In this document: positions 1 to 63,400 of the stretch, one piece after another
Layout of the letters: each line of letters begins with the position of its first letter
Numbering within the stretch: the stretch's first letter is position 1
Assembly (NCBI GenBank): GCA_965644295.1
Contig: CBFFRP010000184.1
Span: 1 to 64,000, forward strand
Length of the DNA: 64,000 nt
Source: Paraphysomonas bandaiensis
Lineage: Eukaryota > Protista > Chrysophyceae
Direction of reading: 5' to 3'
Notes under the pieces: model-generated
The model's database searches: none
What the model saw: the letters and a program-made list of their open reading frames with translations, nothing else
Told to the model about the DNA's origin: nothing
Translations under genes and position numbers: made by a program

Positions 1-1555
1 CACTTTCGAGATCCGTTGTTGTGTTGAAGAGTTGTGTGTCAGTGCCTCTGCATTCTGCATGAAACACAAAGAAATGAATAGTAAAAATTTAGTTATAAAG
101 GAAATAAATTCAATTGCTAATGTATATCTATAGAATATATTTATAGATTTGGGATTGCCTGGTGAAAGTATCAAAAAATAGATGTGACGAATAACGGTTG
201 TTCCACGAAGATTTCGTTTATTGTTAATTACAACTTTTTCTTGGAAGTTCGTTGAGTATAAACAATTAAATTTCAGATTTACTTAGTACATGATAAGTCT
301 AATCTTCACACACGTTACTGATATCAAGAGACAAAAAGTATTACAACTAACTCTTGAATAGTTAAGACGAGAATATTAGGATTGAAAAGACATCAAAATG
401 GCTCATTATATATGCAAAAGATCTACTCCATATGCTTCATACAGAAAATAACATAACCAATTGATTACACCTCCTAGAGTTGGGCTACCGATACTCTAGA
501 AACTTCGACGCCCAATTCATATCAGCAGTATCGAGAGTGACTGCATTTACTTTTATAGTGCAGTGATGCAATGCTATACAGTTGCGACGAAGGATTTAAA
601 TACATATATCGTACAAAGAAGAGAGAAATTCGAGGGTCCAGTACGTCTCAAAAACGGATCGTGAGACGTTAAAATGGTTGTTTGCTTTGGGTCGTGTTAT
701 TAGGGCCTGATTTCATTGGAAAGATATTAATGTAGAATTTCAGTGTACAGATGGTGTGCGATTAGAATTTAAGCAGATGTACATTCTCAACTGATTTGGC
801 TGTCAAGTCTCCAATATCAAAGCATATGAATCTTGGTGGCAAGGCCCTCATTTAATTCATCAGACTGATATGTCTACGAGCTGCCCAATTTTCAGCATTT
901 TGGTGTGTAATTCACTTCTTTAGAACGAATCTGCTGTGAATATTCCTAAAATCATTGAAACGTATAATCGGCACCTTAAGGCATTGTATTAATCCATTGT
1001 AGCCAGATGTATCTTTTATTCGTTAAATCCCCCTCTCAAGATAAACTATCCATGTACTGTGTATGTATTCTATGCAAACAAACAGAAGGTAAAAAACACG
1101 TCATTTTCGCACATCCAGGCTTTAGATATCTAGATATCCCGTTTTTTTGTATTCAGGCATCTAGATAATACATATACGAGTAGAAGGACAGCCTCGACGT
1201 ATCTGCAGTCAGCATCTTATTTTTTCGGGAATATATTGAAGCAAATATCCTCTATAATACTGATATACAACTACGGCTGATATTCAGATAATTGTTATCT
1301 CAATAATAGAGGCATCTTTGAACAAAAATATACAAAGGATGCCGATACGCGAGCAGTGGATGCATGTGTGTGTTCTTCGTCAACTTCTTCTTCGAGTTGT
1401 TCTGAGCGGAGTACTCCAATTCTCTCTGAGCGGCCCACAGCATATTAGTGTGTGTATGTATTGTATAAGCCCTCGTGTATCCGTATGAACAAGTCATTCA
1501 TGACCATTAGCGTTATCATCTACAGTAGTGTCCAATCGAGTGTAATTTGATCCGG

Positions 1556-18248: not shown

Positions 18249-18282
<34 letters not shown>

Positions 18283-18472: not shown

Positions 18473-18503
<31 letters not shown>

Positions 18504-18764: not shown

Positions 18765-18798
<34 letters not shown>

Positions 18799-18912
18799 TG
18801 TATGTATGTATGTACGTATGTATGTATGTATGTATGTATGTATGTATGTACGTATGTATGTATGTATGTATGTATGTATGTATGTATGTATGTATGTATG
18901 TATGTATGTATG
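18122..18912. repeat. (TATG)n tetranucleotide microsatellite, ~790 bp
   Basis: Nearly perfect TATG array with a few TATA, TAAT and TACG variant units. Confidence 0.99.
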
Positions 18913-19041
18913 ATGGACTGGGTGCTGAGGCGGGATTTGATTGCTATGATGAAGGAAGCATCGCCGTTGGGGCCATTCTCCCCCCAGGCTTTGTGTCACC
19001 TCTGTGTGATATATCATAGACTGTGTTAGGCGTAGACAGAT

Positions 19042-39400: not shown

Positions 39401-42400
39401 GGTGTCCATATCGGAGATGGTGCAATAAGCTCATCTTCATCGCCATTACCATCTTGAACATCTGGGATAACCTCTTCGGCATACACATCATCATCTCCGT
39501 GTTCATCTGTCCACTTGGGAATAATAAGGCGTGCAGATAAAAACGTGATATACAACCCCATGCCCATGAAGCATGTCCCCATTCTCCCAACTCTGTATAA
39601 ATTAATTCGTGAAAGATCAAGTGTCAATGAATCCGACCAGTCACCAGGAATATCTTCAAAGCAAGTAGCTGAAGGTTCTTCAACAGGGTCAGGAGAGCAT
39701 AATGTACCACCATCTTCGTAGGACGAAAGCCACGCAGATATCCACACCGCCCCAATGAGAACAGGAGTTACTGCAAGCGTACACCCCACAATAGGGGCCT
39801 CTGATATAATATGATACAGAATATAAGAGTGGAAGGCGGGTGGGTGCCGTAGCTTCGTCAGTGCGCGGTTAATGGCCCATACAATGACTGCCACGGTAAT
39901 TGACAACAACCCAACCATGGTAAAAAAGAACATGTAGACATCAGCCGTAAATTCAAACATATTCAATAGCTCGAACCACCACAACGCCTTGTATCTGATT
40001 TCTAATTGATATTCACTTGTGGCAATATCTTCATTGAAGTCAGTGACGCACTGAGGGATACCCTGCTTCTCAAGATTTTTTTGCTCGGAACTTCCTGACG
40101 TAAGTGTGTGGCACTGAAAGTCCGGCAAATACGAAATAATTGCTACAACCAAACGTTTATAACCCTGAGTAACTTGATAGTACTGGATAGTTAGTCTCAC
40201 TTGCCTAGGCACGACGTTGTTTAAGCCGTCTGCTTCTTCATCTACAGTTACTGGAAGTGCTTCGAATGTACCGCGAAGTTTATCGAGGTATGAACTTCTT
40301 CCCCAGCGCTTTGTGTAATTTCTAGAAAAATCCGGATTTTGTTTAAAGACAGATTCGTAGTCTTTGGGGGCAACTGGTTCTTTAGTTAAGTAAAATATTG
40401 CTTCTCCACCTTCCATCTCAAACCATCTAGGCTGTCCAGCAGGAACATCTATTTGCTCCTCGAATATGCACTCCAAAATAGCCCCCCTATGCTTGGACGT
40501 AAACCACTCCACCTCTTTTTGATTGATGACTCGAGTAACTTCGTCTTTCGGGACCACATTATAGCATTTATCAGCAGTGGGATATATCTGATTGTCCCAA
40601 ATGTACTGGCTCACAGGTTTCGTAACTTCGTAATCAATGATTTTGCAATCAGGGTGTGTTTCAAGCATTTTGCTGATAGACATGTAACTGTCAAACCCTT
40701 TACAGTTGCTAAAAAATGGAAAATACGGCAAACCCAAGTATGGGTTTTCACCCGTGTCATCTCCTACAATAAACCAATCAGCGCTTTGCTGCACATCAGT
40801 GAACGGATCTGGCACAGCATACAGGTCCTCACTAACTTCTTCTAGGTCTGGAACAGTGACATACTCTTCAAAAGTGAGAGACGAGTTAGGGTTCTGTTCA
40901 ATATAATCGAAATAGTTCAGTCGTTCTCTAGCCTCATATCTTTCAGAATACTGAGGATCACCAACAAAGAGGTCCGAATTTCTGTTAATTAAAACTTTGT
41001 TTTCAAAACGAACACTTGTGGTGCCAGGAGCACCACCGATGGGCTCTCCAGGCAGCCGATACACTTCAGTGGGCAAGTTCAACGGTGGCTCCATAAACTC
41101 AAAGTCTTCGGCGTTGATAATTGCCATAAAGGCAGCACGAGAAGGATGGGAGGCTGTGTATTTCGCACGCCCGGGCGAATGCACATTGATGTCACCTTTG
41201 TTCGGAACATAACCATCGAAAGCTGTATAGTAAATTCCATTCAGTAGTTCCATGACAACTGTCAGTTCAACATGCTCCAATGCTATAATACTTATCTGTT
41301 GAAAATCGTGCTTATTGTCAGGAAACCCCGCGTCAACTCTGTCGCTGGTGAAGTAGTAGGGCAAACTATGTCTCTCACACTGACAGCACCCGGGAGTCAT
41401 TTCATAGAAGTCGTAGTTAGGATCCGAATAAAGCCTCCACTCTTCATCCTCAACCCATGTTGATTCTTCTTGCTTGTCAGCACCTTCTGCAATTGGCCCA
41501 TCAGGGCCATTCCTGGTGTCAATTTCCCACACTAACTTTGGATATGTTCTATCTTCACAGAAGAAAGGGATTTGCCGACATTTATATAAGTCAGGTTCCA
41601 TGAAGCGAACATCTACATAAGGTGAATCACAAGGAACTTTGGTTCCGTTAACCATGACACACGATTCAAGCTTATAGCGGTTCAGACATTCTTCATACTT
41701 CTCTTCTTGAAGAGCAAGACTCGGAGTTGTGCAAACTGGTGGCTCGGACAGGTAATCACAGATATAACGCGTGGGGCAAGGCTTGCAGTCCACATAGACA
41801 GCCCATACATAGTGGTCGCCATAAGTTAAATTAGTTTCAAGGCCGGACATATCCAGCGTGAAGGTCGCAACTTCGAAAGCTTCCAATACAACAGTACCCA
41901 CAGTATACGTCTCCTCTCCCAGCTGACTGTCTGCACCTCCTAGTTCCCAAAAGTCTGTCATATTCTGTAAATATGGCTTGGAATCATTATACCAATTAGG
42001 AACAACATTCACACGACGCAATACGTCAACCCCAGTCGACAAACAGTCTTCTACACTGATCGATCTTACCACAGAAACTGTACCATTTGGACACTTGTGA
42101 AGCCGCTCACATTCACACACATCATGTCTACCAGGCCCAAGCTCCATATCACCGGTCACCGACATCTGCATCTCCAGCCAAACAAGATCCTCCAATCTTT
42201 CTCCGAATTCCTCAAGAGCTCTAATTGATTTATATAAATCAAATGTATACGGGTCCATTTCAGTGCGTTCAGACAATCCGACTTCCTCTAATTGATTATT
42301 CCATTCTGCTTCCACGGCACTTTTAAGTTCGGGATATGTAGAAAAGTTAAGCATCTCAGTCCAAGTGAATTGCACCTCCAGTCCACTATTCAAATTCAAC

Positions 42401-45400
42401 GTTCCATTCATACGAGGTCCGATTGAGGGTTTAGAATCCTTAAATTCTAAGGCGCCAGATGTCATCGTAATCTTTCCGTCTGGCATATCAGCAGAAAACT
42501 CACATATGGTAGAAGTTTTATGAATTCTCTCAAACCACACATCACGGTTACCAGTATAAGGTGGGTTGATAGACCCAATACCAAGATCGTCAAGTGGCAC
42601 GTCAGAAGTGCATTTCCACAAACGATATATTGCCATCATAACTCTAAAATAGGTGGCACAATCGCACTCTGCTCTGAAAATAGCCTGATCCACTAGTCGC
42701 CATTTATGATCACGTGCACACATACTATTTTGTGAGGTAGCTTGGTTAACTATACTAGGGCGATAGTATTTTCCATCATCATATCCTGTCAAGGTGGAAT
42801 CATTTTGGTAAGGAGCACGACCGGGAACAGCTTCAGCCAAATATTCAATATGAATATTAAGAAGTTCTTCACCTTCAGGAAGCCACTCGACAACATACCG
42901 CAATTTCAATTCGCTGTCTACACCATCTTTACACCTCAAATCATGTAGCGACAGCGTTCTGACATCATCGTTTCCGATATACGCAACATTGCGAGTGTCG
43001 CGATAAGGATCGGCAGTCTCAGGGTCAATATTTCTGTTTGTTGCATCGTTAGCACGAGTTCCTAACGTCGCACTACCAGTTCCCGACGGGCAAAAATGAT
43101 CAGCGGGACATTCGTTTCTGAAAGCTTGACCAAGTCCCGTTCCATCACCACAAACATAACCTGCCGGACAAAGCATCTTAAATTGCCCCAATGCGGAAGG
43201 TAAGTTCGTATCTGGAGTTGTACCGAAATCGCATACGTATCCTTCTCTACATTGATACGCCGTACTTCTTTCTGATGAAGTCATTTCATCACATATAAAC
43301 CCTTCCGGACATGTTTCTGCTTCGGACTCAGCGCTAACAGAAGAGGCTTGATAACATATCTGGTCTGCTTCGCATGTTCCAGGATACAAAACATCCAGGC
43401 CCCGTAAAATATATTGCTGTACTCCCGTTGGATCATAGTTGGGATCTGTATACACGTACTCATCGACCCCCGTGTCACTCTCTCTGTATCGTGAAGCATT
43501 CATCAGTCTTATACCTTTCGTGCAATTGTAAGCTGGTTCATATCTTCTTGCGTGAGGTAAGTCAATACTCATTGATCCTTTACCAAAGAATCCGTCATAT
43601 ACATCTGTTCCGTAACCTTGATGCTCCTCGCCTTTCTGAATGAAATAAGTTGGACCGTAATAATCAGATATACGTTGATACAACGACGAGCCTAATCTCT
43701 GCGCGTTATAGTAGCATTTAGCCTGCTGCTGATACTTGACAGATGCTTGATCAGTTGTACGAAAATGAGCACCGCGTCCCAATATATCGATGTAAGGGGG
43801 GACCAATTCTCCAAAGAAATAAATTTGATTGACTGGGTCAAGGGTGCCATCCGAATATCCGGGGTTTAACTTCAAGCATTCAAAATCACTGTATCGAGGG
43901 GGCATATCAAACTCACCAAAATAATATTCAACAACAGGGTTTCCATCTTTCTTCACAATTGGTTCAAAAGGGGTTGGTAAGTCATCCCAAGAGCACGGCA
44001 TCGTCATACCCTCAACTGCGCATACAGTGCCAGTTGGACATCGAATACATTCTCCCCTCTCTCGTAGACCATAGTTCTTCGACCAAGTTCCCTGAGGACA
44101 TGCTACACAAGGGAGGCCATCTTCTTCTACTGTGGAGCGGAAAGTTCCTGGCACACACAAATCAGCTATCATCTGGCCTTCGTTTACACAAGATGTCCCA
44201 GGTGGACATGGATAACATGTCGTAGTTTCGATTGTCGGAGCATAGTACCCTGGTAAGCATTGTGCAGGCCGAATTGTACCCTCCAGCTCAGCATACCAAC
44301 CCAATGGAGATGGAATTGGTGTCGCGGTACCTAAAGGACAGTAAAACCCAGTTGGACAAAGGCCAGAACCCTGGGGTGTGGCCGAAGCCGCTTCACAAAA
44401 GAAACCTTCAGTGCAAAGTTGGGCGTTTCTAAAATTCCCTTTCTCAACCTCTGCAAACCCAACTCCTTTTAGGCAATAAGTACCTGGGGAACATGGGTAA
44501 GGTCGCAAAGTTGTATCATTTCTAAAAGGATCCGCTGTTATGGTTCCATTCGGGCAGTAGTACCCGGCAGGACACTGGTGATTCGGAGCACGCAGTCCTT
44601 CTTCACTACATGCAAAGCCTGGTGGGCATATAGCAGGTCCTACTCGACCAAATCCAGGGCATATGAAGCCCCTAGGACAAATCGTACATTTTAACATCGC
44701 TATCTGGCCATTGAAGTGGCCTGGTGGGCAAGGTAACGGATCCCAATGGCCGTCGCGCGGACAATACGTTCCCACCGGACATGCTAGTTTCACTCCAAAT
44801 GGGCAGTAAAACCCCTGAGGACACTCTCCAGCACCAACAGGATCAGCACTTCCTTCCGGGCAATACATGCTCTCGAAGCAAGGCTGAGGAGTAGTAAAAT
44901 TCTTCATGTTGCCCTCATCTACTCCAACACCTGGATGACAATACATACCAGCAGGGCAAGGTACTGGACGTCGGAGTTTGAACTTACTGGCAGAATAGTC
45001 GAAGGCATAATCAGTGGCTGGAAAGTCCTCGGCATCTTCGTATTTTAGACAAGTATCATCTAAACAAAATCTTCCCCGCAGAGGCGTAAAAGGAGAATCT
45101 GTAGCAAGTGGTAGTAAATGACGCTCTTGCCAAAACCTAGACGGCTCATCAGATGCTTGTAAACCATAGTCATCAGTCTCATTAGTCCAACAACCTTCAT
45201 TTCTAGCACCAAGGTGGAGACTATGCCCATATGCAATTCGCCCTCTTCGTAGGGTTGATGTTCTTTCAGCATGAGAAAGAGACGGATATAACTCAGACGA
45301 TAAGTCAGGATGACCGCACGTCGTAGCGGAAGTAGCTGTTCCTTCCAGACAGAAGTGCCCTTCAGGGCATGGATTATCTGCAATCGTAATACCAGTAACT

Positions 45401-48400
45401 TCACATACAAAACCCGCGGGACAAATTCGAGGAACTTGCATACCCTCTTCTGGGCATACGTAGCCAACGGGACAACGCAAGCAGTCGCTTTGAGCAACTT
45501 TTGGATTGTAGGTACCCTTGGGGCACAGTGTGAAATTCGTATTGAACTCTCCAGGACAAAAGGTGCCCGCTGGGCATGGAATTACACTCTGCTGAGGACA
45601 ATAATGTCCCGTCTCGCATTTTACATTGAAAGTATAGACACGGCGATTATTGGTGTAATCTTGTCCATTGTTAGAAACTTCTATGAACACTTCACCAGGC
45701 TGTATACCAGGTGATGTATGAGCCGCTCGCTCATGGGGAGTATTAAAGGATTGTGAACGGTACTCGCGAAGATAGGCATGGTCTGGCTGCCGCTCAGGCA
45801 TACGTGCAGTGAAACAAAGAAGTAAACTCTCCGATAAAAACGTCGGAACAGAAACGAATTCGCCGATCCTACACCTAAGTTGCGTTGAGTTCACAAAACC
45901 AGCTCCTTTGATAACTACTGGATTTCTTGTATCAATAAAACCTTCATTCGGTAAAAGCGAATCCACTCTGGCATCCTCTTGGTAAAGGTACGCTATCCCA
46001 CTATCAGTAAAATCCTGTCCATTGTTACTTACTTCGACAGTCACAAGCAAGGACATGTACAGTGGAAATCTATATGCCGAAGGGAACAGCAAACGATCAG
46101 GCAAACCTTTGGAATTAAAAGCATCCTCGCCTTGCCAAACAGGGTCAGGATATCGATTTCGAACTTCCGACAGCGCCATTAGTCTTAACCCACCACTTGT
46201 GTCTTCATCTAGAGGAGGCGAAGGACATATGATATAATTTGAACTCACAAATTTTCCGGGAATGTCAGAGTAACCAAACCGACAAGTTAACCTAGATGAA
46301 TTAACAAAACCCACTCCATATACATTGACTAAGGAGCCAGCAGTCGTCGCCGGGCCGGAAACAGGGAATATTCTACTCAAAGCTGGATCGTTATAAAAGA
46401 AAAATGGTACTCTAGAGGCCGTATAATCTTGGTCATTGATGGACACTTCAAAAGGATAAACTCCTGCAGGATGCGGGGGAGCATAGCATTGAATGTTTCC
46501 AACATCTTTCAAGAAAGCTTGTACAGCAATGGAACCAAATTTACATCTCAATTCGTCAGTTTCATTGAATGGGCCACCAGACACAAGGACAGAAAAATTA
46601 CCAGATGTCGGTCCCAGAGGCGGAGACAGCCTCGTAATCGAGATTTCATTATCGTACGAGTATATTATACTGCTATAATCTTCTTCTACAGTTTGTACTT
46701 CCGACACTATATTCTCTGCAGGGTCATCTCTAAAGTATCCATTATTACTGACTTTTAAACTTACAGATCTTTCTGACGAGGTGGGAGATATACATATGAT
46801 TAAAGAAGAATTGATGTAGTGTGCAACTGGTACAACCATGTCTTTCCTGTCACCAAATCGACAGGCTAACTGTGACGACTTGATGAAATTCTTACCATGA
46901 ATCAGCACTTCAGTTCCCCCCCGTCGGGGGCCGTGATTAGGAATGATCGCATACACCTCGGTTTCAGGAATATAATCAAAGGTAACATTATCAACCGACC
47001 AATCTTGGCCGTTTAAGTTGACTCGTACTTGCACAGTGGAGCCATTTCTCTCGTCGAAGCCGTTTTGTTTGGTGTTGATATCCATATGCCAACCCAACCC
47101 CAGTGAATCTTCCACGGGAGTTAGCAGTGGAACATCAATAACCTCATATGTTGAACCACTGTACTCAATTGCCTTCGCGATTATATTCCATGTAAACGAG
47201 CTGCTATCAATAACAGCTGATCCAGTTGAATTAGCTGTTGCTTCCAGAAATGTAATATCATAAGAATAACCACCAAGTACAAAGCCCAGGTTTTCAACAT
47301 AACCTTGCAAAGATGATGACACGATGGTCACATCATTCACACTTCGTAGGGTAGTGATAGCATTGGCTATACGACTTCGGGGTGCCCCGACTGCAACATA
47401 AGAAGATTTCTCTGAGGCTAGTTCAGAATGACAATAAACACCACTGGATCTTTCTTCACACCCGATTTCATTCATAGATACTGAGAACAACCCTCCTCCC
47501 CAATCTAAAGTTGGTTCTGCATATTCTGAAAGGCTGATATCAAGAGTCGTTTGCGAAACATTAAAACTCAGAGCCGGTATAAAATCAATGTTTTCCGCAT
47601 TGTAGGCTTCTCCAGAGTTCAACATAGGAATCAACAATATCAAGTAGTCAGAAGTTGTATTAGACAGTCCCACTCGTTCAACAGTGACAAACGCAGACGT
47701 ATCAGACGACGAAAACAATGTTTCCCATTCGTCCGCACTGGCATTCCAACGCAGGGAACCTATCAGGACATCATACCACATTACATCTATCGTTTCTACA
47801 TCGTCCCCACGGCCACCTCCGCTTATCCTTATATGACCAACAGTTGTAGATGACCCAGCTCTATCTACTGCAACAGAACTGGTTGCGGATGTACCATTAA
47901 GTCGTGAACCATCGACTTCCAACATTCTGAGTCTGCTTTTGGCATGTAGTAGAGACGTGAAAGTTATACTCCAAGAGGACTCTTCAAAAGTCTCTACTAC
48001 CTTTGAGACAGTCACATTGCTCACAGTGGGGAGGTTATTTAAAGCATTCGCAACATCCGCAGCCGAAGAAGTAGGAAACAATAAATTAGTTGGGTCGCTT
48101 CCATCATATGTCAAAGTAAAATTGCCACCGAGAGCACGAGATGTTGTACTCATGACGGTAACATGGCCTGAAACATTCGTTCCTGCGAAAACACCGTCGG
48201 TCGAAACACTTACATTGGGAGGGGGTACACCATAACCGAATTCAATTTCCCACTTATAGTGGGTTTTATTGACAACTTCAGTTTTGGTGACAGTGGTACT
48301 CTGATATTCTGCGTTAAGCATTACCAGCCCAGCTTTCATGGCAGACGCCGGTGCATCTACATCAAGATTGAATGACATATTCGAAAATAAATTCGGCTCC

Positions 48401-51400
48401 AATGATATCTCCAGAACACCATGAAGTGATTCAGTCCCCTCCTGCAAGACAGCGTAGTCAGATGTACTACCACTAGTTGTTAGCAGAGAGCTATTCACTG
48501 CAATAACCTCTCTCCGTTGCAAAAACTCGTAGGAAATATTGAAAGCGATGCTTCCATCACCGAAGGGGCCGCTTCGCTGTACGTTCACATTTGTCACATT
48601 TGCAACACTTTCGAGAGCAGCTACCATTCTAGAAGTGACTGTCATCTCGTCTTCACTAAGCTCCACGAAGACGGTCCCTGAATCAGTTTGGTTATTTCTA
48701 AATCCAAGATAACCGCTTGGCTCGGAACCCTCAACAATGACTTCAACATCACCATAAACATTGGTTCCAGTCATGTTCTCTGTACTGAGAGTTATAAGAG
48801 GCATATTACCGCCTACTAAATTGCCTGTGAATCGAATTTCCCACTCCACACGATCACCAGCAGCTGTCACAACTCGGGTTACATTTACTGCATTTGACGA
48901 CAAAGCCGTATTTATGGCATTGGCTACAGTCTCAGCAGATGCGTCATGAGGAATAGGTGCAGTTGTAAACTGCTCCCCATCGTGAAGTCTAACTGTTAGA
49001 GTGACATTTCCCTGAAGACCTCTCATCGTGCTATTTTGGATGTCAATGGCAGTGACAACATCACATAGCATCAGTGGAACATTATCAATGCGCGACATGA
49101 AAACAATAACCCAAGACTCCATGGTAGAATTACGAATCACTGTGATATTTCCGATCATTGCCCTGTGGGCTGCAAACGCAGACTCGACATCAGCGAGTGA
49201 TGCTCCTGAGGGAATATTAACACTGACATATGACCCATTATATCCCAGCACATCGCAAGAGACGGAAGATGAATCTTCCATTGGAATCGCTTGTATTTCA
49301 TGTGAAGGAATATCCGATCGCCATATTAATTGTACTGAATCTCTACTATACTTAGGGAATATTTGAGAAGGCTCAACAATGAGATCAGGGGTCAAAAATG
49401 AGTCTAACACTGGATATTCACTGCTGTTAAACTCCAACAACCATGAGTTGTGAAAATTTTCATCAATGGAAACTTGCTCCACATACACTCCACTGTACCC
49501 CATGTATGCAAGTGCCGCAGTTACAGTTTCGGCAGATGCATTGAACGCAAAGTACTTTGTTTGCACATCTTCGTACAACATTTGATTCAATTCAGTATTT
49601 CTTGCGCTACTGACGACTTCTTTCAGTCTATCGTCGTAGGCAAACGTTTCTCTCAATGCAAGCGATATATTACCGTGTAGTCTCTCGGTAGTTGCAGACA
49701 CTAGACGAGCAACGATTATTTCGGAGTCTCGAGAGTACTTCGTATATAAGGTAACATCGTCGTACACTTCAGTGGACACTTCATCACAGCAAGCAGTGAA
49801 GAGAGGTATCTCCCCAGAGCGCGATACGAATGTTACCATCCAGGCATACGTATTGATTTCGTGTTGGAAAACGGACCGCACATAATTCAAATGTAAATCA
49901 ACTAATTGTTCTTCACCTCCCCAAGTATTAAAGTCCAATAAACCGGTCGAGAGGCGTGTTACGACGACATCGCCAACATTCGGCAGCTCCTCAAGTATAC
50001 GCTCCAGCTCCTCAGCTGAGCAATCATAGGGGATGCTCTCCGTTGTGAAATTCTCCAACGTCAGGTAAAATGACCCACTTACTATACTTGATCCTGCAGT
50101 GCTTATACGTTGAACTTCAGCTACTCTACCATCACTCAATGTGGAGAAGAAAGCGGCAGCATTAACTCCACTTAAACCAGCCCCATTCACAAGAAGTGGA
50201 TCGATATCGCCAAGGAAAAAGGGGAAGGATATGGACCAATAAAATGTGTTCTCGATTGGACCCTCACTCCGCTCTACCTCACATTGAGCGAAATCACTGT
50301 CAATATAAACGAGAGCATCTTTAACTTCTGTGGCAGAAGCATCAAAGTTCAATGGAGGAGCAGTAACTCGCTCCCTCTCGTTCAATTCGTTCGATTTCAT
50401 CTTATATAAAATAAAAGTTCCACCTATTGTAGATCCATTCACTTGAGTGACAACAGCAGCGTTCAGGGAAGTTGCCGATAGTCCTCTGCTGTCCAGTGAA
50501 ATAGGTGGCACATCACCAATGGGTGTATTGTACTCAATTAAATACATAACTCCGTCGTTGATGAAAGAGTATTTCTTCACGGTAACATCAATATCTGGAA
50601 TAGAATTTAGTGCACTTTCAACAACATCAGCTGTGGAATTCACAGCAAGCGTCCCAGACTTGTACCCAGCAAAATATAACTCAAAAGTTCCAGAAATACT
50701 TCTTGTTGTTCCCGTGCGCACAACTCTGGTTTCAACAGTAGCCCCTACATCCAAATACGACTCCACATCTAAGGCACTTACGTTTCCGAATCTATGGAGG
50801 AACGTAATTGTCCATGTCGGAATATCACTTTCGATAGAGAGCGTTACATCCACTTTACCAATCGTGGAAACGCTTGCCAAATAGGCCTCCATATCCGATG
50901 CCGTTGTATCATGCATAATATTCTCAGTCATCATACCATCTAATCCCAGTCGAAAATACCCGTTACTTGTATTCGATGATCCCTGGAGAGTGATATTTAA
51001 TATTGCAGCCCACCCACCATGAGAAATTGTAACAATTTCGGCGATATCAGATGAATTTACCAGCATGAACTCATTGACATCTCCGAACGACTTCTTAAAT
51101 GTCACCTCAAAACCACTTCCGAATTCGGAATCAAAGCCCGTTACTACAGATCCTACCGCCGACGGTATGCCTTGAAGAGCTATTTCCACTGTTGACGGCA
51201 ATGCGTTGGCAGGGAACGATACTTGACTACCATCAAGTTCAACTGTTATCACACTGTTACTTGGACTTGACTCATTGACATAGATTCTTTGAATTTCTGA
51301 ATACTCACTTTTATGTGAGTTATACGGTGCCCGTAGAATGACTGCCTGTCGTTCTTTAAAAGGGGTAACAACAGTCGTCAATAATTGCACTTCTTGCCTC

Positions 51401-54400
51401 TTTCCAAAATCTCTAACTTTCAGCAATCCGACAACAGGGGGTGACAAATCTACACCAAGGTTAATTTTCTGAACCTCATCAATATCAGTAACGTTGACAC
51501 TGAGTAATCCTATTTCTGGAACCGCACTATCGCCGCGCACTTCGATTGTCATAATATCACCTGTAAGGGGTGAGGTTGCTAGTGTCACTCTTTGAACTTC
51601 CTCGACATACGGTAACGCCGCCAATCTGACTGTCTGTACTTCATACTTTCTCTCCAAAGGGGGTGCAATGCAATGAATAATACTATCAGAATACCTGGTA
51701 GCTGATACGATAGTGTCTCCAAACCGACACTGAACCAGTTTATCACCTAAAGTAAAGTGCTGACCACGAATACGAATGTTTGTGTCCCTAAATATTGACC
51801 CTCTAGTCGGCTCAATTCTGCTCAAAACGGGAAGGTGATGATACTCGAAAGTCATTACTGAGTTGTTTAAAAAATCTTGACCGTTCAATGAAAAAGATAC
51901 TGTAGCAACAATGGGGTCAGGAACTGAAGGAGTAACGCACACTATGAGACCATCAATCGCCAGCTGAGCAGATACGATCTGATCATCAAACGAACACAAT
52001 GCATATTCAGACCCTCGAATGGAACTTCCTGTGATACGAACAGTGGTATTTCCCTGTATTGAGCCGTATGAAGGAGTTATCTCAAAAGTATCAACAGCAG
52101 GGTAATACTTGAACTGCAGGACATTATCTGATATTTCCAACCCATTCAGAGTCAAGGCCACAGTATTCAGTACTTCTTCGGATGCGGCGCCTGAAAGAAG
52201 AGGGGGCGAATAAAACTCAACAGTTGAGTTAGAGGTGTACCGCGCAGGCAAGATGTAGTTATTGAACACGACGCGTATATCATAATTAGAAAAGATATTT
52301 GGGGGTCGAAATATTTCATTGACTTGTATCACAATGCGGGTACCTCCTTCAATCGGCCCACTCGCAGGATGTAGACTGTATAACTCTATCGGCTCCACTA
52401 ATTCAAAAAGTATTCTGTCGTCAGTGAAGTGCTGACCATCTAGTGTTATTTCAACAGGAACGAATGGTCCTTGGCCAATCTGGACCTCTTGATGAAACAA
52501 AACGGTGGGGTACTCTCCGATGTCTGAGGACAAGAGCTCAATGTAAATCACACCATCAAAACTATCAGTGGAAACAACCAGAAATGTAATATTCCAACTG
52601 CACCCGACAAAAACTCCATCAAAATGAATCAAATCGCCACATGTTCTTTCTACTTCAACATCATTTATTCCATTCAACGCTTCCATAGCTGATTCCATAA
52701 CGTCACTGGATGAATTATACTCTATTTCTGTACTGGAATCACCATTAACGAAAACAGAGAAATAACCGTGAGGAGGTATGTAATCACCATCCACAATCAC
52801 GTTAACATCAACAGACACGTTTTCACCTACAATGCCACTGCTATCGGCAAATAATAATGCATCCAATGCCCCGCTGGATATCGGAAACGTCACAGTCCAC
52901 TCCTTGTGATAAAATGTTGATACGACTTCGTCAACAAGAATGACATTATTTCCGATCAAAGGAGAAAACGCATTGTGCATAATAAATTGAATTTCTTCAC
53001 GAGTTGCATTCGACAAAATTGGACCAGTCTGAATTCCACCTAACGATAATACATAATCACCAGCGATGACTGCAGCGCCGCTTTCCACAACTTCGGTTCG
53101 TAAGTTAACACCATTTCCTGTTAGATTGGATCCAGCGAGTTGCATGGGGGGCGCGTCGCCGGCTTCAGCAGGAAATGTTATAGTCCATGAAGCGAAATAC
53201 TTTCCCGAAGAACTTGATTCCACTTCAACGGGCAAGCCAAATGACAAAAGCAACATATCTGCAACATCCTTCGATGTGGCATCCAGTGGAAGCGTTGCGG
53301 TCGTATTCGATACGTATCCACCAACAGCATTCGTTGGACCCCATGATATCGTGAAGTGTCCTTTAAAAGGCATAGACCCACGCTGAATGATTCCTGTGGT
53401 AAGGTTGTATGAAGTCTGACTATTCAAGTCAATATCGTGGGACGCTATATCTGGCCTCTGACCATCTTCATCTAAAAATGTCACTACCCACCGATAGCCA
53501 TACGCTGACTCAGCACGTAGCCGGGTCACTGCCACATCTCCCACACCCGGAAGAGAACGAAGCGCTGCTTGTACAACAATAGCACTGGAGGTAGCACCCA
53601 ACAGCGATGATCGAGCACCATGATATGACAATGAAAATGACCCAGATATTTCGGAATCTCCAACCACTTCAACCCACTGAATTTCATACGTCGGCTCAGA
53701 CGACTCCACTATGATTTGTTGAACTTCTTGTCGTATGTTATTCTGCACTATTTTCCAGCTCTGAACCTCGGGCTGAGCGGAGTCTGATCCCCCATCTAAG
53801 AGGGTACGAACAGATATCTGATCACCAGTCATCCAGCTAGTGGCATCAGTTACCGACAAAACAACAGGGGGAACATCATCTTCGCGAGAAACAAATTCAA
53901 TACTGTAAGACTCATACATACACATCACTCCCAAAGGATGCTCCTTGGTACCATTGAAAGTTTGATTGATAATGACACTACCGACTCGAGGAAGTTCAAC
54001 CAGAGCATTTTCAAGTGTGGCTTCAGACAAGGAACTTATATTAAATGGTGAACTCGATACACCCTCCAACAATAAACGGATCATTCCATTCATCGCATCT
54101 GACCCCAAGGGACGTATATATCGCCACAACTGAATCTCCTGAACTTCGTGTCTGATCTTTGGAAAAAGAGTTTTAATTTCATGAGTAGGCGGAATAACTG
54201 TCATCTCTCCTAGCGTACATTTCGCGATGCTCGACGACAACACATTAGCGGGAAACACAGTTCCCCCGATTGAGCACGCCGCCAGTGGTGTTTGAACAAA
54301 ATTGGAGCCTCTCAGAGTAACTTCCACACCACCACTCTTAGCTCCAAGAGTTGGAAAAATCGACTCTACATTAGGACGAGAAAACAGATTAAACGTAAGT

Positions 54401-57400
54401 TGATTGGAATATGTTTGGTTGTTCTTCGTAATACAAACTTTTGCTGTCGCGTTAGTATTTAAGTACCACTCGCTGTTCGACTCATCAAAAAAATAATGTC
54501 CAATATTCGGTACAGAGCAAGTCATATACACGTCGTCCAGACGATTAGCAGGAACTTGAACAACTAGCGAAGGTATAGTGCCTAATATAGGGCTTAACAA
54601 GCTAATATTCATCACACATAGCAGTGAGTCACTGTAAGTGCCAATGCCTTGGGTCTCAATCGTGATATCAGTACTCTGATCGATTTGCCCATATTGTGGG
54701 GTCAGGGATATCAGGGACATCACATTTTCAAATTCAAAGAGCTTAGAGCTTCTAGCGACTACAGCATTAGTCACATTTGAGTCATGAAGCTTCAATGACA
54801 CAATGACACTACCCCTAGGATGTGGTGGTGATACACAGTGTGCAAAGGACTCATTTACGATAACAGCAGGCACATGTAATGTACCGAACAAGCATTCGGT
54901 ACTCTGATCATCAGCTGTGACAAAACCACTGCCTTCAAGTGTAACATTAACCCCTCCGTTCACAACTCCACTTGATGGAAAAATATTCGATACCACAGGA
55001 GCATCATCCACTACAATAAACAAGTGATGACTGGAAGCTTCGAGGCCGTCATTATATGTCAGTCGAATATTGCAGCACCCCGCTTGAATTTCTTCAACAG
55101 TAGAATGAGTTAAATCATTACGCGGAAACACATCAGAAACATTCATCAGCGGAAGATTTCCCCCATTTATCGGATGACCAGTTGTCAAAAACGTCACAGT
55201 CCATTCAACGCGATTGTCTTCCTCGTAAAAGAACTCCTTTTTCGAGACACTGATATCACCCACTGTCGTTAAAGCTGACAAAGCTTCTGAGAATTCATAT
55301 GCAGTTGTATGAATGGTCATGAAGTCGGTTGTCTCGCCCATGTACGAGACAGTGAAAGTTCCTTCCACTGTTCCCACCCCCTTTTCAACTTCATAAACCC
55401 TAACAGATGCTTGGCTTCCCAGTATACCCGAATCGTCCACCTTCATAAGGTTAATATCACTAACAGGATGGTTGAAGGTGACCAGGTATCTCCTCCCTAC
55501 ATTTAGTTCTTCGAGAATAACCTCGATATCGTCTTCGTATGCCCCAACAACACCCACAATGGCATCTTGCACTTCTTCAGCTGGTGCGTCCACAGCAATA
55601 GGCTGAGAGGTACGAGAGCCGAAGGACAAACTGTAAGTCCCTGCCAGCACACTTCCACGTTGCAACTCTGTGACGTCAACTCTTGCGTGAGTGCCATTCA
55701 ACATAGAGCTCTCAACTACAATTGGTTCCTCGCTGCCCTTGTTCACTAAAAATGTTATCAGCCAGTCATAGCCTCCATCGATTTCAAATGTATGCCGTGT
55801 GACGTTTACATCCACACCAAAGAGATCTTCAACAGCACTTTCTACTACAGCAGCAGAGGCATTATGCAATATGTCGGTTGAGTATTTCCCGTTATAAAAA
55901 AGCTTGAAAGTTCCTGACAACGGTTCAGATGTTGCATCAACAGTGGTGTTAACCTCACACACAACATTATTTGTAAAGGAGCCAGTTACGAGGGAGGTGT
56001 CACAGTCAAAATATTCCATTTTTCCAGCAATCGAAGTCAATTGTATATCCCATGCTCTGTAGTCACCAGGAATTCCAGGGGTATTTTCGTAAAACACAGG
56101 TCGAACACGGATATTTTGCAAGCCAAGACTCCTCGTAATATGGTCTTCAAGAACATTGTATGTGATGTTAACACTTAGTTGTGGTGTAAACAAATCACCC
56201 AATCCCAGCCTGAAGTAGCCCCCCAGCTCCGAATCAACTTGGATAAGAATTCTTTGAGTCATGGGAGTTAAAAATGGTGATAATTGATGTATTCCTCTAC
56301 CAGCACGGCTAGTATTTCCATTCAAAGCCACAGGAACCCCATCACTGAGAGCAAGCCGATCGAAGTAACTTTCGAAAACATAGAACGAAAGATACCAGCT
56401 TCTACCACCCGCGGGACGTTGTCGCTCAGTCACCGACAACGACTCTGGGCCAATTGCCACGAGAGAGGATATCTCAGACTTGACATAATCTGCAGAGGAG
56501 TTAAGGAAAATTCGAGCACTATTGGTACTCCCAGAAATAGAAACTACAACATCGCCGGACAGACAGCAGTCTTCAAGTGGGCGGGAAATCTGTGTGAGAT
56601 TAATGCTTATGTCACCATTGGATTTGAGCTGATCTCCATCAGCGGTTAACATTGCATCTGACGTTGTTAATTCCAAAAATTCAATTAACCAGACAAACCC
56701 ACCAAAATCCCTATATTCTCGAGACACAATAGTTTCCCCAAGTCCGAGGCGGAGCATGGCATTTACAATGTCGTCAGATGTCGAATGTGCAGGTACACTG
56801 ACAGCATTACTTTCCGAATAAAGAGACAACCATCCCCCTAATTGATCAAGATTTCGTTTTGATAATCTCGTTGTGTTCACTTCAAACCCTGTTGGAGTAT
56901 TACAAAAGGAGCCTCTGAGATCGATTAACGGAATATCACCGAAAATATTAGGCGTATCTCGGAAAATGACTTCCCACTGTATAGCACTCGGAGTATATGT
57001 GCTAGTGACAGACACATCCCGGACACCCATCACACTTTCTAGAGCTTCTTCCATCCACAGGGCTAGGCTAATGTTATTTGTGGAACCCCCATTGATAATA
57101 AACTCCGCTGAATCTTCGTTATTGAAAGACACAAACATCGGTTCAGATTTAAAACCATCAGGACACGAAGCTTCAATCAGCTGCTTTTCAGGGCCAGTTC
57201 CTTGACGAACAGTGGTAACTGAACAAACAACAGGCGTATTACCAGACACATCAGAGATATCAACTTCAAGGGTAGGCACATCACCGACATCCGAATCAAA
57301 CAGCACTAACCAGTTATGAACATATAATGCCGTGTGCTCCTCAGATTCCACGGCAATGCTATCTGGCATGAGTGTCAGCATTTGGCTAATATCAGACGAC

Positions 57401-60400
57401 AGGTCAAACCCGCTAGACGTGGACAATAGAGTGGCACCGGAGAAGTATACAGTTCCCGACAAAGCCTTCGCTTGCCCAGGAATAACTTCTCTAGTAAGGA
57501 CCATAGCACGCTCTGAAGGCCCTAAAGTTGAATTGAATGGTCTCACCAATTCGAGATTACCGGGATTCTCTGTAAACGTCATACTCCAACGAAATGATGT
57601 TTCACTGATGTCGTATCTGGACACCGTCAGGTCTGGAATATTCTTGAAAGAACTTAAGACTGCCATCTTGAGATCCTTTGCGGAAGCGTCATAAGGGATC
57701 GCATCTGTGACGTACGAATCGTACTCCAGATAAAAATAACCACTATTCGCACCAAGAACTTCTATATCTTGAACCTCGCATGCCACACCGTCTACAACAG
57801 TTTCCACGGAGGTTGAGATCGAGAGAGCGCGCGCAATATCGACAAAAGATACAGTAGCTTCGGCGACGTCACCACAAGAAACGCCAAATAAAATTTCATA
57901 TGAAACTGAAGCAATGACGATTTCAGCTGCCAGATCTTCGTCAAAACTCACCCTTTTGTTGACCATTATATCATTGACATCAAAGAGCGTATTAAGAATT
58001 TCCTGGAAACGTGTCGCTGTCTCATTCCAATGAATTACCGCCCTCCAAAAACCAAATTCCAATGAGATTGTGCCTTTGTCGAGTATTGGTCTCCTTTGGT
58101 TATCATAATAGAGCATTGTACCAGACACGTTAATCACTTGAACTTCCTGGACATATGCAGCAGGACGAACAACAATCCTCTGCGTCTCTGAATTCGGTGA
58201 TACCTTCGTCTCAAGCTGATAAACTGCCCTCGATCTTTCAGGTATCACTGCCGCAATACGTAATTCTATCTCCTCGTACTGTACACCCCATGTGGAAGAT
58301 CGCAAACGCTGAATTTCAGGTTGATCGGGGAGTGCAGACACTTCAATGCTCTGCACCTCTGGAGACAGCGGGCTACCGATAATGGACACCTTTTGCACTT
58401 CTCTGGACTCTGGCAATGCAGGAGGTAAAGTGCAATGTATTAGCTCTTCAGTACTGATGTGGGCGGTGGAGTTTGCTACTATTTCACCATCCCCATGAAG
58501 AAACTGACACAATGGATCCGGAGGGTTCGTTAGAATATCACTGCCTAGGATTCGCAAATCAACGTTAGTGAATTTCGTGACACGGACTGGAGACACTGAT
58601 GCCAGAATAGGAGGATCAACAACTCGCAAATTAACATAGCTATCAGTCTCTACAACTCCCTCCGCAACTAGGGAAATGGTCAAATTAACAAATCCGACTG
58701 GAAGGCCTTCTGGGACATCACATGCTACATACCCACCGTCATTAATGTACAGTGCCACAGAGAGAAATTCTCCCCCGTGCCAAACACATCGCATTTCAGA
58801 ACTTCCAAGGAAATTATCACCATAGAGCTCAACGGTTTGACCACCAGTTGAAAAAACAACTTGAGGATATACTCTATTAATGCGAGCCGGTTTCAAATAG
58901 CGAAACACTAATTCTCCAGCTGCTTCAACAGCACTCGTCAAAATACCGTCCGCAACCCGAAATACATTTACTGTGGAATTGGTTAACAAATACAATTTCA
59001 ATGACACATCTCCAGACAATTGGCTCAATTGTTCTGGCGTTGAACATTCTATCGTGTCTCGACTAATGTACTTTCCCCGAACTGCGACATCATTTCCGAA
59101 CACACAATACCATTTCAACGATGGAAAAAAATTGATACCATATAAATTTATGACAGTGTGCCCTGTTATTGAACCATGTTGAGGATAAAGAGTAATAATT
59201 CCCGGTCCTGAATGATATCGAAAGGATAACGAAGTCGGGTCAAAGTTAACACCGTTGTTGGAGAAGCTAAGCGATACAACACCGCTATAACCCACTCTCG
59301 GGAGAGTGCAACGAACCTGGTTATCACTGATCATCATCGCGGGTGAAGTGTGTACACCAAACTTACACATCGCTGACTTGTATGATTGAAAGTTAACCCC
59401 CGATAACGTTATAGGTATTCCACCACCAACTGGCCCAAATGCAGGAGTTATAGAGGTAATATTAACTGCAGAGTAGTATTCAAAAGAGAAACCGGTGCTA
59501 TCGAAGTCTAACATATTATAACTCAACAAAACAGGAACAACTTTTCTGTTGAACAGCATATCACCTTCAACAGGTGGAGTCATACAAATTAACTGTGTAC
59601 GTGATACATATGCGGCAACCACAGGTTTGCTGTCTCCGAAACGGCAACTTATCGTGGATATACTCTCGTCAAACGTTCCAAAAATATTGTAGGCCGTCCC
59701 CCCCATGGAAGGGCCATAAGAAGGATTAGTTGAATCCACTACAAAATCCATTGTATATTTGAAAAAAAGTTGAGTATTTTTCACGGTTACCCACGAGTTG
59801 CCACCAGTGCTAACCTGCAACAACGCAGACACACTCGTCGAGGAAAAACCATTTGTATAGGTTGGAGTTGAACAAAACACCCCACCATCATTTTCAACCG
59901 TCGCTGGTACGGAATCACGCCCAAACACACAGTTAACGGCTGCAGATAATCCTGCGATACCTTTCGATGAAAACTTAACCACTGTACCACCTCTCCAGCT
60001 CCCTAAAAGCGGCCAGATATCAGAAACTGAAGGAGTAGCCGCATATTCAATATTGCCAACATCAACGTAATCCTCCCCATTCATGGATACTTCCACAGTA
60101 ACAATTCCAGGAGTATGCGGCGGGCAGGTACACTGGATCGTTTGCTTAGACACAAACAATGCCCCAACAATACTGACGCCATCAAAACGACAAAACAAAT
60201 GACTCGGAAACGTTTGGACAAATCCATCACCATTTAACGTAAGGAGTGTGTTTCCTGTCTCGAAAACCATATCGGGAGATATGGAGTCGACTATAAGGGA
60301 GTGTTCCCAGTAAAACAACGGACCATCACTGGTGAAATCTTGACCATTATTGCCCACTGAAACTGTAGCAAATCCGGGGACATTACCAGCAGGGTTAGAG

Positions 60401-63400
60401 GGCGATTCCACTACAATTTCACTGCTAGATATGAATATACATTGAGAAATAATATCAACGCCACCGTCGGAAATGAATCGAACTGAGAGAAAGGGCGAAT
60501 CTATGAATCCACTACCATAAATACGGAGAGAAGTGCCACCACTCGCTGCACCTTCCTTCGGAGAGATGGAGGTCACGGAGATTTCATCGTAATATGTAAA
60601 CGACAGAGCATCACCAACGAGCTGTTTTTTCTTGCCATGAGGCTGTCGTAGAGATACTGTCACATTCGTCTGACCACTCATTCGAAACTCAGGTGCAACA
60701 CACGAGAGTGACCACGTCGACTGGACTGTCGCACCAACTTCAAAGTTTCCAAACTTACAGAACGGAAGAGCATCCCCCCATTCACTGAAGGCATCAAGCT
60801 GAATACCACTGATAGTAACATTTGTTCCACCACTGAGGGGTCCATGTGTTGGGAATATTTGCAACATATGGGAAGTAGCGACGTAATTCAGTTTTTCGTT
60901 GATGAGAACCCAGTCCGTTCCATTATTCGGACTAATCCCGACATCAACTTCTCCGGGTTTATGAGGTGGCGCAATACACTCCATTAATGTGGGAGATATT
61001 CGATGGGAAACTACCGCAACAGACTCGCCAAACTGACAGAGTACCTGTGCAACAGATGGGATTCCATCGCCATATATAGTCACAACACCACCACGTTCAT
61101 CAATAGACTTCGGTGAGAGGGAAAGGTATTCCACTCGACCTAAATACGTATAATAACCAGTATTCGTCACAAATCCACTGTCTGACACTATTTCAAACGA
61201 AACCTGTATAGTACCATTGTATAGTGCACTGGACAAGTTTAGTTCATTTAAAGGTGGGGAAGCAAACACAATTAATCCTGCACTGACATCGACATATTCT
61301 GGGCTAATGCTCACAAACTTCTCAATTTCAGCATACAATCTTACATAGTAGTCTGAATGTTGAAATATTGACGTATTCAACTCCACTGTAACACTCCCGC
61401 CAGTACTAGGACCAAACGCAGGATATACCGACACAATTTCGAACGGCTCGTGCACACTGAAAGTAATTACATTTGAAAGTGTATCCAAGGCTACTAGTTG
61501 TAGCTCTACATCATTAGCAGGAGTTTTAGATGATGCCCACACCGGCATCACAAAGGACAACAAATTAGTGCTTAGATATGTGACACTCAAATGTACTTCG
61601 AATGCAGAGGTGCTTCGAATAGTAACATACGTTGATTCTGAATCAACGAAGCCACTTCCATGAAGCAATACTTCTGTGCCACAAGGAGATATTATAGATG
61701 GAGTCATACTACTTATGTATTGTGCTCTGACAACTTGAATGTCAATGCTGCCTATCCAGTCTTGTTCGTTGCGAGATATATCAATTGTTCCTAGTCCTAC
61801 TGCGTCAGATTTAATAGGACATTTCAGAGTTGTGTTAGAAACCCATTCCGCATTCATCAAACCAGGACCGAACTTGCAGAACCAATCTGTATACGGTGAA
61901 AAAGGTCCACCCAACACAGTGACAACTGATCGAGTAGAGCTGAAAACTGATGATGGCTTCACAAACAGTACTTCTGGATGCCTATAATATTCGTACTGTA
62001 ATTCTGTACTTTCAAAACTATGCCCATTGAATGTTAGTTTGGGCACAACAAACTTTGCTTCATGTGCGATTGGAGCAATACAACTAACTTCATTGGCATC
62101 AGGGTCCACAACTAAAGCATCACTGACAAAATCATCAAACATACATCTAACAGTGCCAATATGTACGATGTTTGACAACCGAGGAGATTTGATACTAAAC
62201 TTTACCACAGTGCCACCGTCTACAATACCACTATCTGGGAGCATCATGTCCACTCGAAGACGACCAGAATATAAAAACGGTATAGAATTTGTCGTATATG
62301 TGCTTGTATTACGGCAGAATACACGTACATCGACTACTGAGTCCAAATAACTATTCAAACTTGGCGGTGTCTGACACGTAATTGAAACAGCGGTAGTCGA
62401 TTCTGGCAGGGCAAGCATCGATACTCCCGAAAATTCACACGAATACAAAAAGGATGGGTTAAAGCCGATTCCCGAGAGATGAACCACGGTATATCCAGTT
62501 GCAGGACCAATATCAGGGGATATACTAGTCAAAGAAAATTCCTCGTAAACAAATATATGTGCGACATGTCTAAAATCGACGCCATTTTCAGTGTACTCCA
62601 ATTCCATTTCACCTGCACGAAGAAGGGGTGGCAGCATACAAAATACTCTAGTCGATGATTCAAAAACCGCAGTAAGAAAATATTCGCCTAATCGACAGGC
62701 TCGCTCAGAGTAATCACCGAAGCCTTCGCCACTAATCGCAATAAAGGAGCCCTTCGATGGAACAACCGACACATCAGTGCTAGATACACCACTTATTGAA
62801 AAAGGGGTCGTATATTCGAAATACATTCCAGTCGTGAAGTTGCTCGAATCGTAAGTAACGGAAAACATTTCTTTAGACGGTGTTGAAAGTGCTGGAGATA
62901 TGCAATGCAAAACGGATGATGAAATGCGTCTAGCAAATGACGAAAGAGGCCCAAAAACACAACGAATATCATTTCTATTTGGAAACGACTCTCCCCGAAC
63001 TTCTATGACTGTGCCACCAGATATGTCTCCATGATATGGACTGATTGAGTTTACAACGACGTGCGAATGGTATACAATCTCAAAAGGTGTAGCAGGAAAA
63101 AAATCATTACCATTCAAAGACACTTGTAATGCTAATGTACCTGGAAAATTTCTTCCAGGGATAGAGCATGATATGACGTTGTCACTAAGAATCACACCGG
63201 TAGTTACACCAGTTCCAGCCTTACAGAATGCAACCGTGTTTGGGACAGAAAATCCTGCACCATGAACACTAACTTTACCACCCTCCAGAGGTATTTCATT
63301 CGGTACAACTTTTATAACTGAGGGATCCGCAAAGTAGTAAAATGTCACACCTGACGATGACACAATATTGCCACCAATACCGACATGAATGGGAATGGGT

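What the first reader, a model, noticed from the sequence alone, without database searches (positions are those of the whole stretch)
47045..58410. Balanced-parenthesis domain nesting: a branched ectodomain encoded by one chain
Seen: IPT domains 20, 23 and 26 (counted from the window edge) each break after CxxPP/CTLG and resume with their last strands only after a large insert. They resume at GCCNIRLTYNDG, VPVEITLDGQHF and VQVRVNLNGQDW; inserts are ~58410-55080, ~54200-52470 and ~51655-47045. Each insert opens with back-to-back short strands (EVQxIxV-like), followed by ~90-aa bodies (xGxFxLx..T..I..A..V..AL..VxV..WxVxF..GD) that mostly lack their own first strand. Manual count: insert 1 has 7 run strands and 7 matching bodies, plus 3 self-contained units. 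Insert 2 has 5 strands and 5 bodies. Insert 3 has 9 run strands and 9 bodies, plus 4 self-contained units. Inference: the chain runs outward donating one strand per domain and completes them in reverse order on the way back. That would build three rigid hairpin side-arms with twigs at regular spacing along an IPT stalk. I know of no description of this topology for this protein class.
Basis: partly seen in the sequence, partly recalled or inferred. Interest (0 to 1): 0.9.

Follow-up and report, generated by a model that had tools for sequence, protein, structure and literature searches.

The report
Tree-shaped protein from one chain
A giant surface protein of algae and water moulds grows side branches from a single chain, which runs outward leaving one strand per building block and completes the blocks in reverse order on the way back; the nesting is deeper than the deepest case named in a recent survey of such insertions.

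Summary
Observation confirmed; nesting supported by prediction and covariation, not by experiment. A 9,170-residue ORF (open at the window edge) encodes an IPT stalk, Cys-rich repeats and a multi-pass membrane module. IPT domains 20, 23 and 26 are split by inserts of 10, 5 and 13 units whose opening strands and bodies balance exactly. AlphaFold models (pLDDT 92 and 84) rejoin IPT23 across 580 residues and IPT20 across 1,110. In arm 1, three strand-body pairs 460-900 residues apart form single domains, all last-in-first-out. Couplings learned on self-contained units favour last-in-first-out pairing (z 3-5 after de-duplication); first-in-first-out does not. Arm size varies in relatives (1, 2, 4, 15, 28 units) yet stays balanced. 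The unit has no Pfam model; it has the fold of mycobacteriophage Bxb1 'CTE' domains. Precedents: Bxb1 gp23 nests three such units at another loop; cyanobacterial RpoC2 nests six levels. New: the insertion site, the depth (9 levels here, about 14 in a relative) and use as branches on a eukaryotic surface filament. Arm 3 was not modelled; rigidity and function are untested. The scan noted the same pattern elsewhere in this genome (s1-452779, unchecked).

The parts
36487..63999 (-). Giant single-exon ORF, 9,170 aa in the window, open at the window edge: IPT stalk, three nested arms, Cys-rich repeats, multi-pass membrane module, cytosolic coiled coil
58417..58617 (-). Host IPT20, first part (aa 1795-1861)
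55078..58416 (-). Arm 1: 10 CTE-like units, 7 levels deep, 3 twigs (aa 1862-2974)
58120..58401 (-). Arm 1 strand run, 7 strands starting at 58401, 58359, 58317, 58275, 58227, 58188, 58146
56584..56844 (-). Arm 1 body 5; completed by strand 5 (58227) in the model
   Evidence: 1u8s aligned over model 121..678
55654..55920 (-). Arm 1 body 8; completed by strand 3 (58317) in the model
   Evidence: RRM chains aligned over model 98..983 and 96..984
55378..55647 (-). Arm 1 body 9; completed by strand 2 (58359) in the model
   Evidence: Bxb1 capsid extension, 90 residues, rmsd 2.2, Z 11.9, model 82..1077
55006..55077 (-). Host IPT20, last strands (aa 2975-2998)
   Evidence: 81 of 87 residues of CAMTA1 TIG, rmsd 1.7, model 1..1200
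54208..54378 (-). Host IPT23, first part
52465..54207 (-). Arm 2: 5 units, 4 levels deep, 1 twig; strands at 54189, 54147, 53769, 53727, 53685
52390..52464 (-). Host IPT23, last strands
   Evidence: 86 of 87 residues, rmsd 1.7, model 3..666
51658..51828 (-). Host IPT26, first part
47035..51657 (-). Arm 3: 13 units, 9 levels deep, 4 twigs (twig strands at 51006, 50118, 49299, 47841); counted, not modelled
51271..51642 (-). Arm 3 strand run, 9 strands at about 14-residue pitch
46963..47034 (-). Host IPT26, last strands
43030..45618 (-). Cys-rich repeats, weak Ephrin_rec_like match (E 7e-4, below the Pfam cut-off)
38380..39942 (-). Multi-pass membrane module, at least 7 strong hydrophobic segments, conserved, no family match
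36490..37362 (-). C-terminal charged, coiled-coil-like tail
   Evidence: read from the sequence

Best explanation
The gene encodes a membrane-anchored stramenopile surface filament of IPT domains (probably about 13,000 aa in full) that carries three side arms, one on every third IPT near the membrane end. Each arm is made of ~105-residue CTE-like (ferredoxin-like) units inserted recursively into the loop right after the unit's first strand. The chain therefore runs out as a 14-residue-per-unit cable of first strands, turns at the tip, and returns as a string of bodies. Each body takes the most recent unpaired strand as a central strand of its sheet, and the last body hands the chain back to the host IPT. 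Complete units placed between returning bodies are twigs. Shown by computation: counts, host rejoining for arms 1 and 2, three long-range pairs in arm 1, family-wide covariation. Inferred: arm 3 topology; folding from tip to base during translocation; arm lengths of about 30, 18 and 40 nm (4.6 nm per level at 3.3 A per residue); stiffness from two chains crossing every joint. Function, inferred at about 55%: structural struts or spacers that widen, brace or cross-link a glycosylated surface coat, not ligand-binding tips.
For: Counts balance in all three arms and in hand-read relatives of different sizes: 1/1, 4/4, 4/4 and 9/9, 2/2, 12/12 in Aphanomyces euteiches, 4/4 and 6/6 in FN3 hosts of Thalassiosira, 8/8 in a bacterial multicopper oxidase, 15/15 and about 28/28 in P0016. 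AlphaFold pLDDT 91.9 and 84.1. The host IPT rejoins. Pairs strand2-body9, strand3-body8 and strand5-body5 form single domains. An antiparallel covariation ladder places the strand between two body strands. Last-in-first-out pairing scores z 5.1-7.5 on all groups, 3.2-5.2 at 45% de-duplication and 2.0-3.8 at 38%; first-in-first-out stays near zero or below; control pairs have mean about 0, sd 1. The solved Bxb1 gp23 carries three homologous units whose sequence is nested. For a structural role: tips are not consistently more conserved than other units, and sequon density is higher in the arms than in the stalk.
Against: No experimental structure of this topology. Arm 3 and the internal pairs of arm 2 were not read from a model. 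In this protein alone the covariation score is modest (p 0.001-0.06 by number of couplings; arm 2 not significant). AlphaFold of one chain cannot exclude strand exchange between chains. pTM 0.48 for arm 1 leaves the overall shape open. No localisation or phenotype data exist.
Confidence: 0.88

Rival explanations
1. Same complementation but between chains: the strand run of one molecule completes the bodies of an antiparallel neighbour, cross-linking filaments into a mesh.
For: Covariation and balanced counts fit this equally. Donor-strand exchange is established in chaperone-usher pili (own knowledge).
Against: The innermost strand sits 12-14 residues before its body, as in self-contained units. 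Single-chain models close without strain and rejoin the host. The same module closes inside FN3, oxidase and Dit hosts.
Confidence: 0.07
2. Bodies fold alone as a linear tandem array and the strand run forms its own local beta domain or flexible linker.
For: The strand motif is short and degenerate; a lone, unconserved look-alike occurs at aa 5767.
Against: The strand is central in the sheet. Long-range pairs appear in the model. Counts stay equal while arm size changes between relatives.
Confidence: 0.03
3. Function rival, same topology: the protein belongs to the flagellar surface, for example a hair base, anchor or lateral filament, and the arms bind mastigoneme subunits that share the fold.
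For: The unit profile weakly hits two chains of the tubular mastigoneme structure 9ufe at the same position (E 0.014 and 0.41). Named orthologues come from lineages with flagellated stages. A brown-algal 'flagellar titin' is said to link mastigonemes to the axoneme (10.1101/2024.02.19.579948), and oomycete FN3 giants with these arms are annotated 'titin'.
Against: The mastigoneme hits are weak and did not appear among the top structural matches. The 'flagellar titin' was not shown to be this family. No IPT, TIG, titin or fibronectin wording in the P. infestans flagellar-proteome supplements or a zoospore vesicle paper. Non-flagellate genomes were not tested.
Confidence: 0.3

Closest known systems
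Mycobacteriophage Bxb1 gp23 'tail tip cage' (PDB 9d93 chain M) and the capsid and tail-tube C-terminal extension (CTE) domains (9d9w, 9d9x, 9d94)
   Same: Homologous unit (profile E 5e-41 to gp23; Z 11-15, rmsd about 2 A). In gp23 three units are nested in sequence inside a host protein. [quoted passage not shown]
   Different: gp23 nests at the later hairpin loop, splitting each unit roughly in half, three levels, unbranched, on a phage. Here the split comes after the first strand, giving a bare strand run, up to 9 levels, with twigs, on a eukaryotic membrane protein.
Cyanobacterial RpoC2 SI3 region (hybrid-motif/HABAS domains)
   Same: Recursive insertion of one small fold into itself with bifurcating nodes; described as six-level (PMC13114784).
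   Different: Different fold, cytosolic enzyme, eight domains. Here 9 inserted levels (about 14 in P0016), extracellular, three arms per chain.
Phage tail-sheath outer domains, FliD and flagellin outer domains
   Same: Similar fold at Z 5.7-7.1; out-and-back chain paths are known for these proteins (own knowledge).
   Different: Few levels, mostly different folds per level, polymer subunits.
Tandem-IPT filaments: TLP-IPT glycofibril (10.1101/2025.09.30.679562), plexin and Met stalks
   Same: IPT stalk (Pfam TIG); TLP-IPT shows such stalks as glycan-coated fibrils with a 32.7 A rise per domain.
   Different: No side arms described there; host unknown. No sequence link was tested.
Donor-strand complementation in chaperone-usher pili
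   Same: A strand from elsewhere completes an incomplete domain (own knowledge).
   Different: There it is between subunits and chaperone-driven; here it is modelled within one chain, in stack order.

Membership tests
Recursive (nested) domain insertion, A1-B1-C-B2-A2 | Host domain is discontinuous in sequence and rejoins in space | tested here: met
   IPT23 and IPT20 rejoin in predicted models; IPT26 by profile only
Recursive (nested) domain insertion, A1-B1-C-B2-A2 | Inserted domains themselves host inserts, closing in reverse order | tested here: met
   Three long-range pairs in the arm 1 model; covariation
Recursive (nested) domain insertion, A1-B1-C-B2-A2 | All parts come from one chain in the native protein | not testable with these tools
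   Single-chain prediction only
Bxb1 CTE-like domain | Sequence homology | tested here: met
   Profile hits gp23 at E 5e-41 and the capsid at E 4e-5; PHROG tail and sheath families
Bxb1 CTE-like domain | Same fold | tested here: met
   87-90 residues at rmsd 2.2, Z 11-12
Bxb1 gp23-type nest | Self-insertion at the later hairpin loop | tested here: not met
   All arms here insert after the first strand
IPT/TIG tandem stalk | Tandem PF01833 domains | tested here: met
Mastigoneme proteins (Ocm/Sig) | Shared domain with the tubular shaft proteins | tested here: inconclusive
   E 0.014 and 0.41 to 9ufe chains
Mastigoneme proteins (Ocm/Sig) | Location on flagellar hairs | not testable with these tools
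   No localisation data
Meckelin/TMEM67-like membrane proteins | Homology of the Cys-rich plus membrane region | tested here: not met
   No Pfam, PDB or Atlas match for the membrane module; no structure was predicted for it
Chaperone-usher donor-strand exchange | Ig-like pilin fold completed by a neighbour's N-terminal extension | tested here: not met
   Unit is ferredoxin/CTE-like and closes within one chain in the models

The most novel reading that the evidence does not exclude
The CTE-like unit is an unnamed, portable branching module shared by phages, bacteria and stramenopiles. Insertion after its first strand lets one polypeptide encode a tree of arbitrary depth and branching, folded as a stack, deeper than the deepest nest named in the ECOD survey (9 levels here, about 14 in a relative). 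It builds a branched surface filament conserved from chrysophytes and brown algae to oomycetes that has no description in the literature I could search.
Probability: 0.65. Interest if true: 0.88.

Novelty: new variant of a known kind. Interest (0 to 1): 0.8.

Why it matters
Giant surface proteins are read as beads on a string. This one is most likely a tree, written as balanced brackets in the sequence. It extends the deepest nesting cited in a 2.7-million-domain survey (six levels), gives a natural test of last-in-first-out folding during secretion, and offers a modular way to put stiff side arms on a protein filament. It also explains large unannotated stretches in stramenopile giants, including the oomycete proteins annotated 'titin', and points to a conserved surface or flagellar structure that has apparently not been studied.

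Tried and rejected
Sequence search of the PDB with arm 2 alone: nothing. Mirror-similarity test on the near-identical bacterial arm (do similar strands go with similar bodies in reverse order?): no signal (r -0.26, p 0.93), so how arms grow is unresolved. A lone strand-like motif at aa 5767 is not conserved and was rejected as chance. Apparent arm loss in two Phytophthora proteins looks like gene-model excision (half a strand is left behind in one) and was not used. Meckelin likeness of the C-terminus: no support. The Bxb1 paper (Cell 2025) is not held, so how its authors describe gp23 was not read; nesting there is my reading of the sequence. Literature searches for this topology found nothing, but subscription journals are mostly missing. 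Strand registers for the single-protein test were corrected once by pitch and orthologue alignment (versus 78); the result barely moved.
Full report
The gene. The finding lies in one minus-strand ORF, 36487-63999, 9,170 residues, open at the window edge. Pfam recognises only IPT/TIG domains. After the stalk come Cys-rich repeats with a weak Ephrin_rec_like match, a membrane module with at least seven strong hydrophobic segments and a charged tail. An orthologous locus shows LamG plus TIG, then the arm region, then the C-terminal part, about 12,700 residues in three called pieces. Orthologues of the membrane region at 39-52% identity come from Ectocarpus, Phytophthora, Aphanomyces and Cantina; arm-bearing relatives include Pythium. 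A paralogous group at about 27% has no arms. The stretch 50101-56000 lies unbroken in contigs of two runs, which may be the source sample, and in pieces in two marine metatranscriptomes, with no joints. Another note names the organism as Paraphysomonas; I did not test that.

The observation. IPT23 and IPT26 match an IPT profile in two pieces around the inserts. Strands in runs are 13-14 residues apart, the length of one extended pass along a domain. Across the family, bodies either have their own strand 12-14 residues upstream or follow the previous body within nine residues. Written as brackets, arm 1 is seven opens, then close, twig, close, twig, close, close, twig, close, close, close. Arm 2 is an outer unit holding one twig and a three-deep branch. 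Arm 3 is nine deep with four twigs.

Balance in relatives. At the arm 1 position, orthologues carry 1, 4 or 10 units, each balanced. P. infestans arm 2 is 2/2 and Aphanomyces euteiches arm 3 is 12/12. The module also sits in unrelated hosts: FN3 domains of diatom and oomycete giants (4/4 and 6/6 in Thalassiosira), a bacterial multicopper oxidase (8/8, one strand degenerate) and P0016, with 15/15 and about 28/28, the latter opening with 14 strands. An automatic count over 39 complete blocks gives r=0.93 and 13 exact matches against a null mean of 4.7; it is noisy, so the hand counts carry more weight.

Models. AlphaFold2 of aa 3205-3870 with 40 sequences gave pLDDT 91.9 and pTM 0.74, with all five strands predicted as strands. 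IPT chains align over 86 of 87 residues at 1.7 A across model range 3..666. The first part of the host is only 60 residues, so the last strands must rejoin across 580 residues. The model of aa 1798-2997 (pLDDT 84.1, pTM 0.48) rejoins IPT20 across 1,110 residues (81 of 87 residues, 1.7 A). Single solved domains align to discontinuous parts of this model: the Bxb1 capsid extension over 82..1077 (strand 2 with body 9; 90 residues, 2.2 A, Z 11.9), RRM domains over 98..983 (strand 3 with body 8) and an ACT-type domain over 121..678 (strand 5 with body 5). All three are the pairs that the stack parse made beforehand. I had no coordinates, only aligned ranges, and the RRM and ACT matches are at Z 5.6-6.8.

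Covariation, independent of AlphaFold. Mean-field coupling analysis on 702 self-contained units gives an antiparallel ladder between the strand and the body's W-x-V-x-F strand (positions 1-57, 3-55, 5-53), plus contacts with the last strand. The strand is therefore central, as the first strand is in the RRM/ferredoxin fold (established knowledge), so a body without it would have a hole in its sheet. Scored with these couplings, 273 nested pairs in 66 proteins favour last-in-first-out pairing at z 5.1-7.5, while first-in-first-out and shifted pairings fall at or below the shuffled mean. After removing related arms, z is 3.2-5.2 at 45% identity and 2.0-3.8 at 38%, and control position pairs give about 0 with sd 1. 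For this protein alone, p is 0.06, 0.02 and 0.001 with 7, 12 and 20 couplings. Geometry agrees: the last strand is only a few residues from the first body, which rules out first-in-first-out order for extended runs (inference).

How it most likely works. The chain leaves the host IPT, runs outward as first strands, closes the tip unit locally, then zips back, each body capturing the latest free strand. Complete units between bodies branch off as twigs. During secretion about 100-130 residues of strands would wait unpaired until their bodies arrive (inference). At 3.3 A per residue the arms would be about 30, 18 and 40 nm long, about 10 nm apart if the 32.7 A IPT rise of TLP-IPT applies. Two chains cross every joint, which should stiffen the arms, but the models do not show this. 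Tip units are not consistently more conserved than the rest, and N-glycosylation sequons are denser in arms than in the stalk. I therefore favour a structural strut or spacer role (about 55%). A flagellar-hair role is a real rival (about 30%): the unit weakly matches two chains of the tubular mastigoneme structure 9ufe, and brown algae have a 'flagellar titin' of unverified identity.

What is known. The unit has no Pfam or NCBIfam model but is homologous to the Bxb1 CTE domains and resembles phage sheath, nozzle and FliD domains. Bxb1 gp23, a solved structure, holds three units whose first halves come in series and whose second halves follow, that is a three-level nest at a later loop. The ECOD insertion survey names six levels in cyanobacterial RpoC2 as its extreme example, with bifurcating nodes (PMC13114784). 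So nesting, and even self-nesting of this fold, is not new. The strand-run variant, its depth, and its use to branch a eukaryotic surface filament were not found in the searchable literature. Verdict: a real feature and a new variant of a known kind, interest 0.8.

Noticed in passing
window 37840-40749 (-): Membrane module plus flanks, 39-52% identical across stramenopiles and about 27% in an armless paralogous group, with no Pfam, PDB or Atlas match. Far more conserved than the ectodomain; may be a channel or signalling unit.
   Followed up: partly
P0072 (L004:148-10248): Bacterial multicopper oxidase surface protein (GCA_016199325) with an 8-level arm of near-identical strands and bodies.
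   Followed up: partly
P0016 aa 230-4200 and 5330-7150: Arms of about 28 and 15 units, up to about 14 levels deep; many bodies carry a second small beta domain inserted near their start.
   Followed up: partly
P0002-P0014 (diatom and oomycete FN3 giants): Proteins annotated 'titin' or 'fibronectin type III' carry the same nested arms inside FN3 hosts, including a conserved nine-strand run in oomycetes.
   Followed up: partly
PDB 9ufe chains BA and EA, residues ~194-301: Tubular mastigoneme proteins weakly match the unit profile over its whole length.
   Followed up: partly
P0175 aa ~1024-1040; P0179 aa ~3700-3865: Phytophthora gene models that lack an arm present in close relatives; probably annotation cuts rather than real loss.
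   Followed up: partly
window 46680-46701 (-): Lone strand-like motif in an IPT loop with no body; absent from orthologues.
   Followed up: yes
window 18064-19029: Four overlapping ORFs on both strands with strong GC skew (0.32); probably a tandem repeat.
   Followed up: no
window 33273-34280 (-): Retrotransposon Pol fragment (Pol_BBD).
   Followed up: no
window 3660-4460 (+), 15642-16304 (-), 23728-24909 (-): Ordinary neighbours: EF-hand protein, GH92 glycosidase exon, class V aminotransferase.
   Followed up: no
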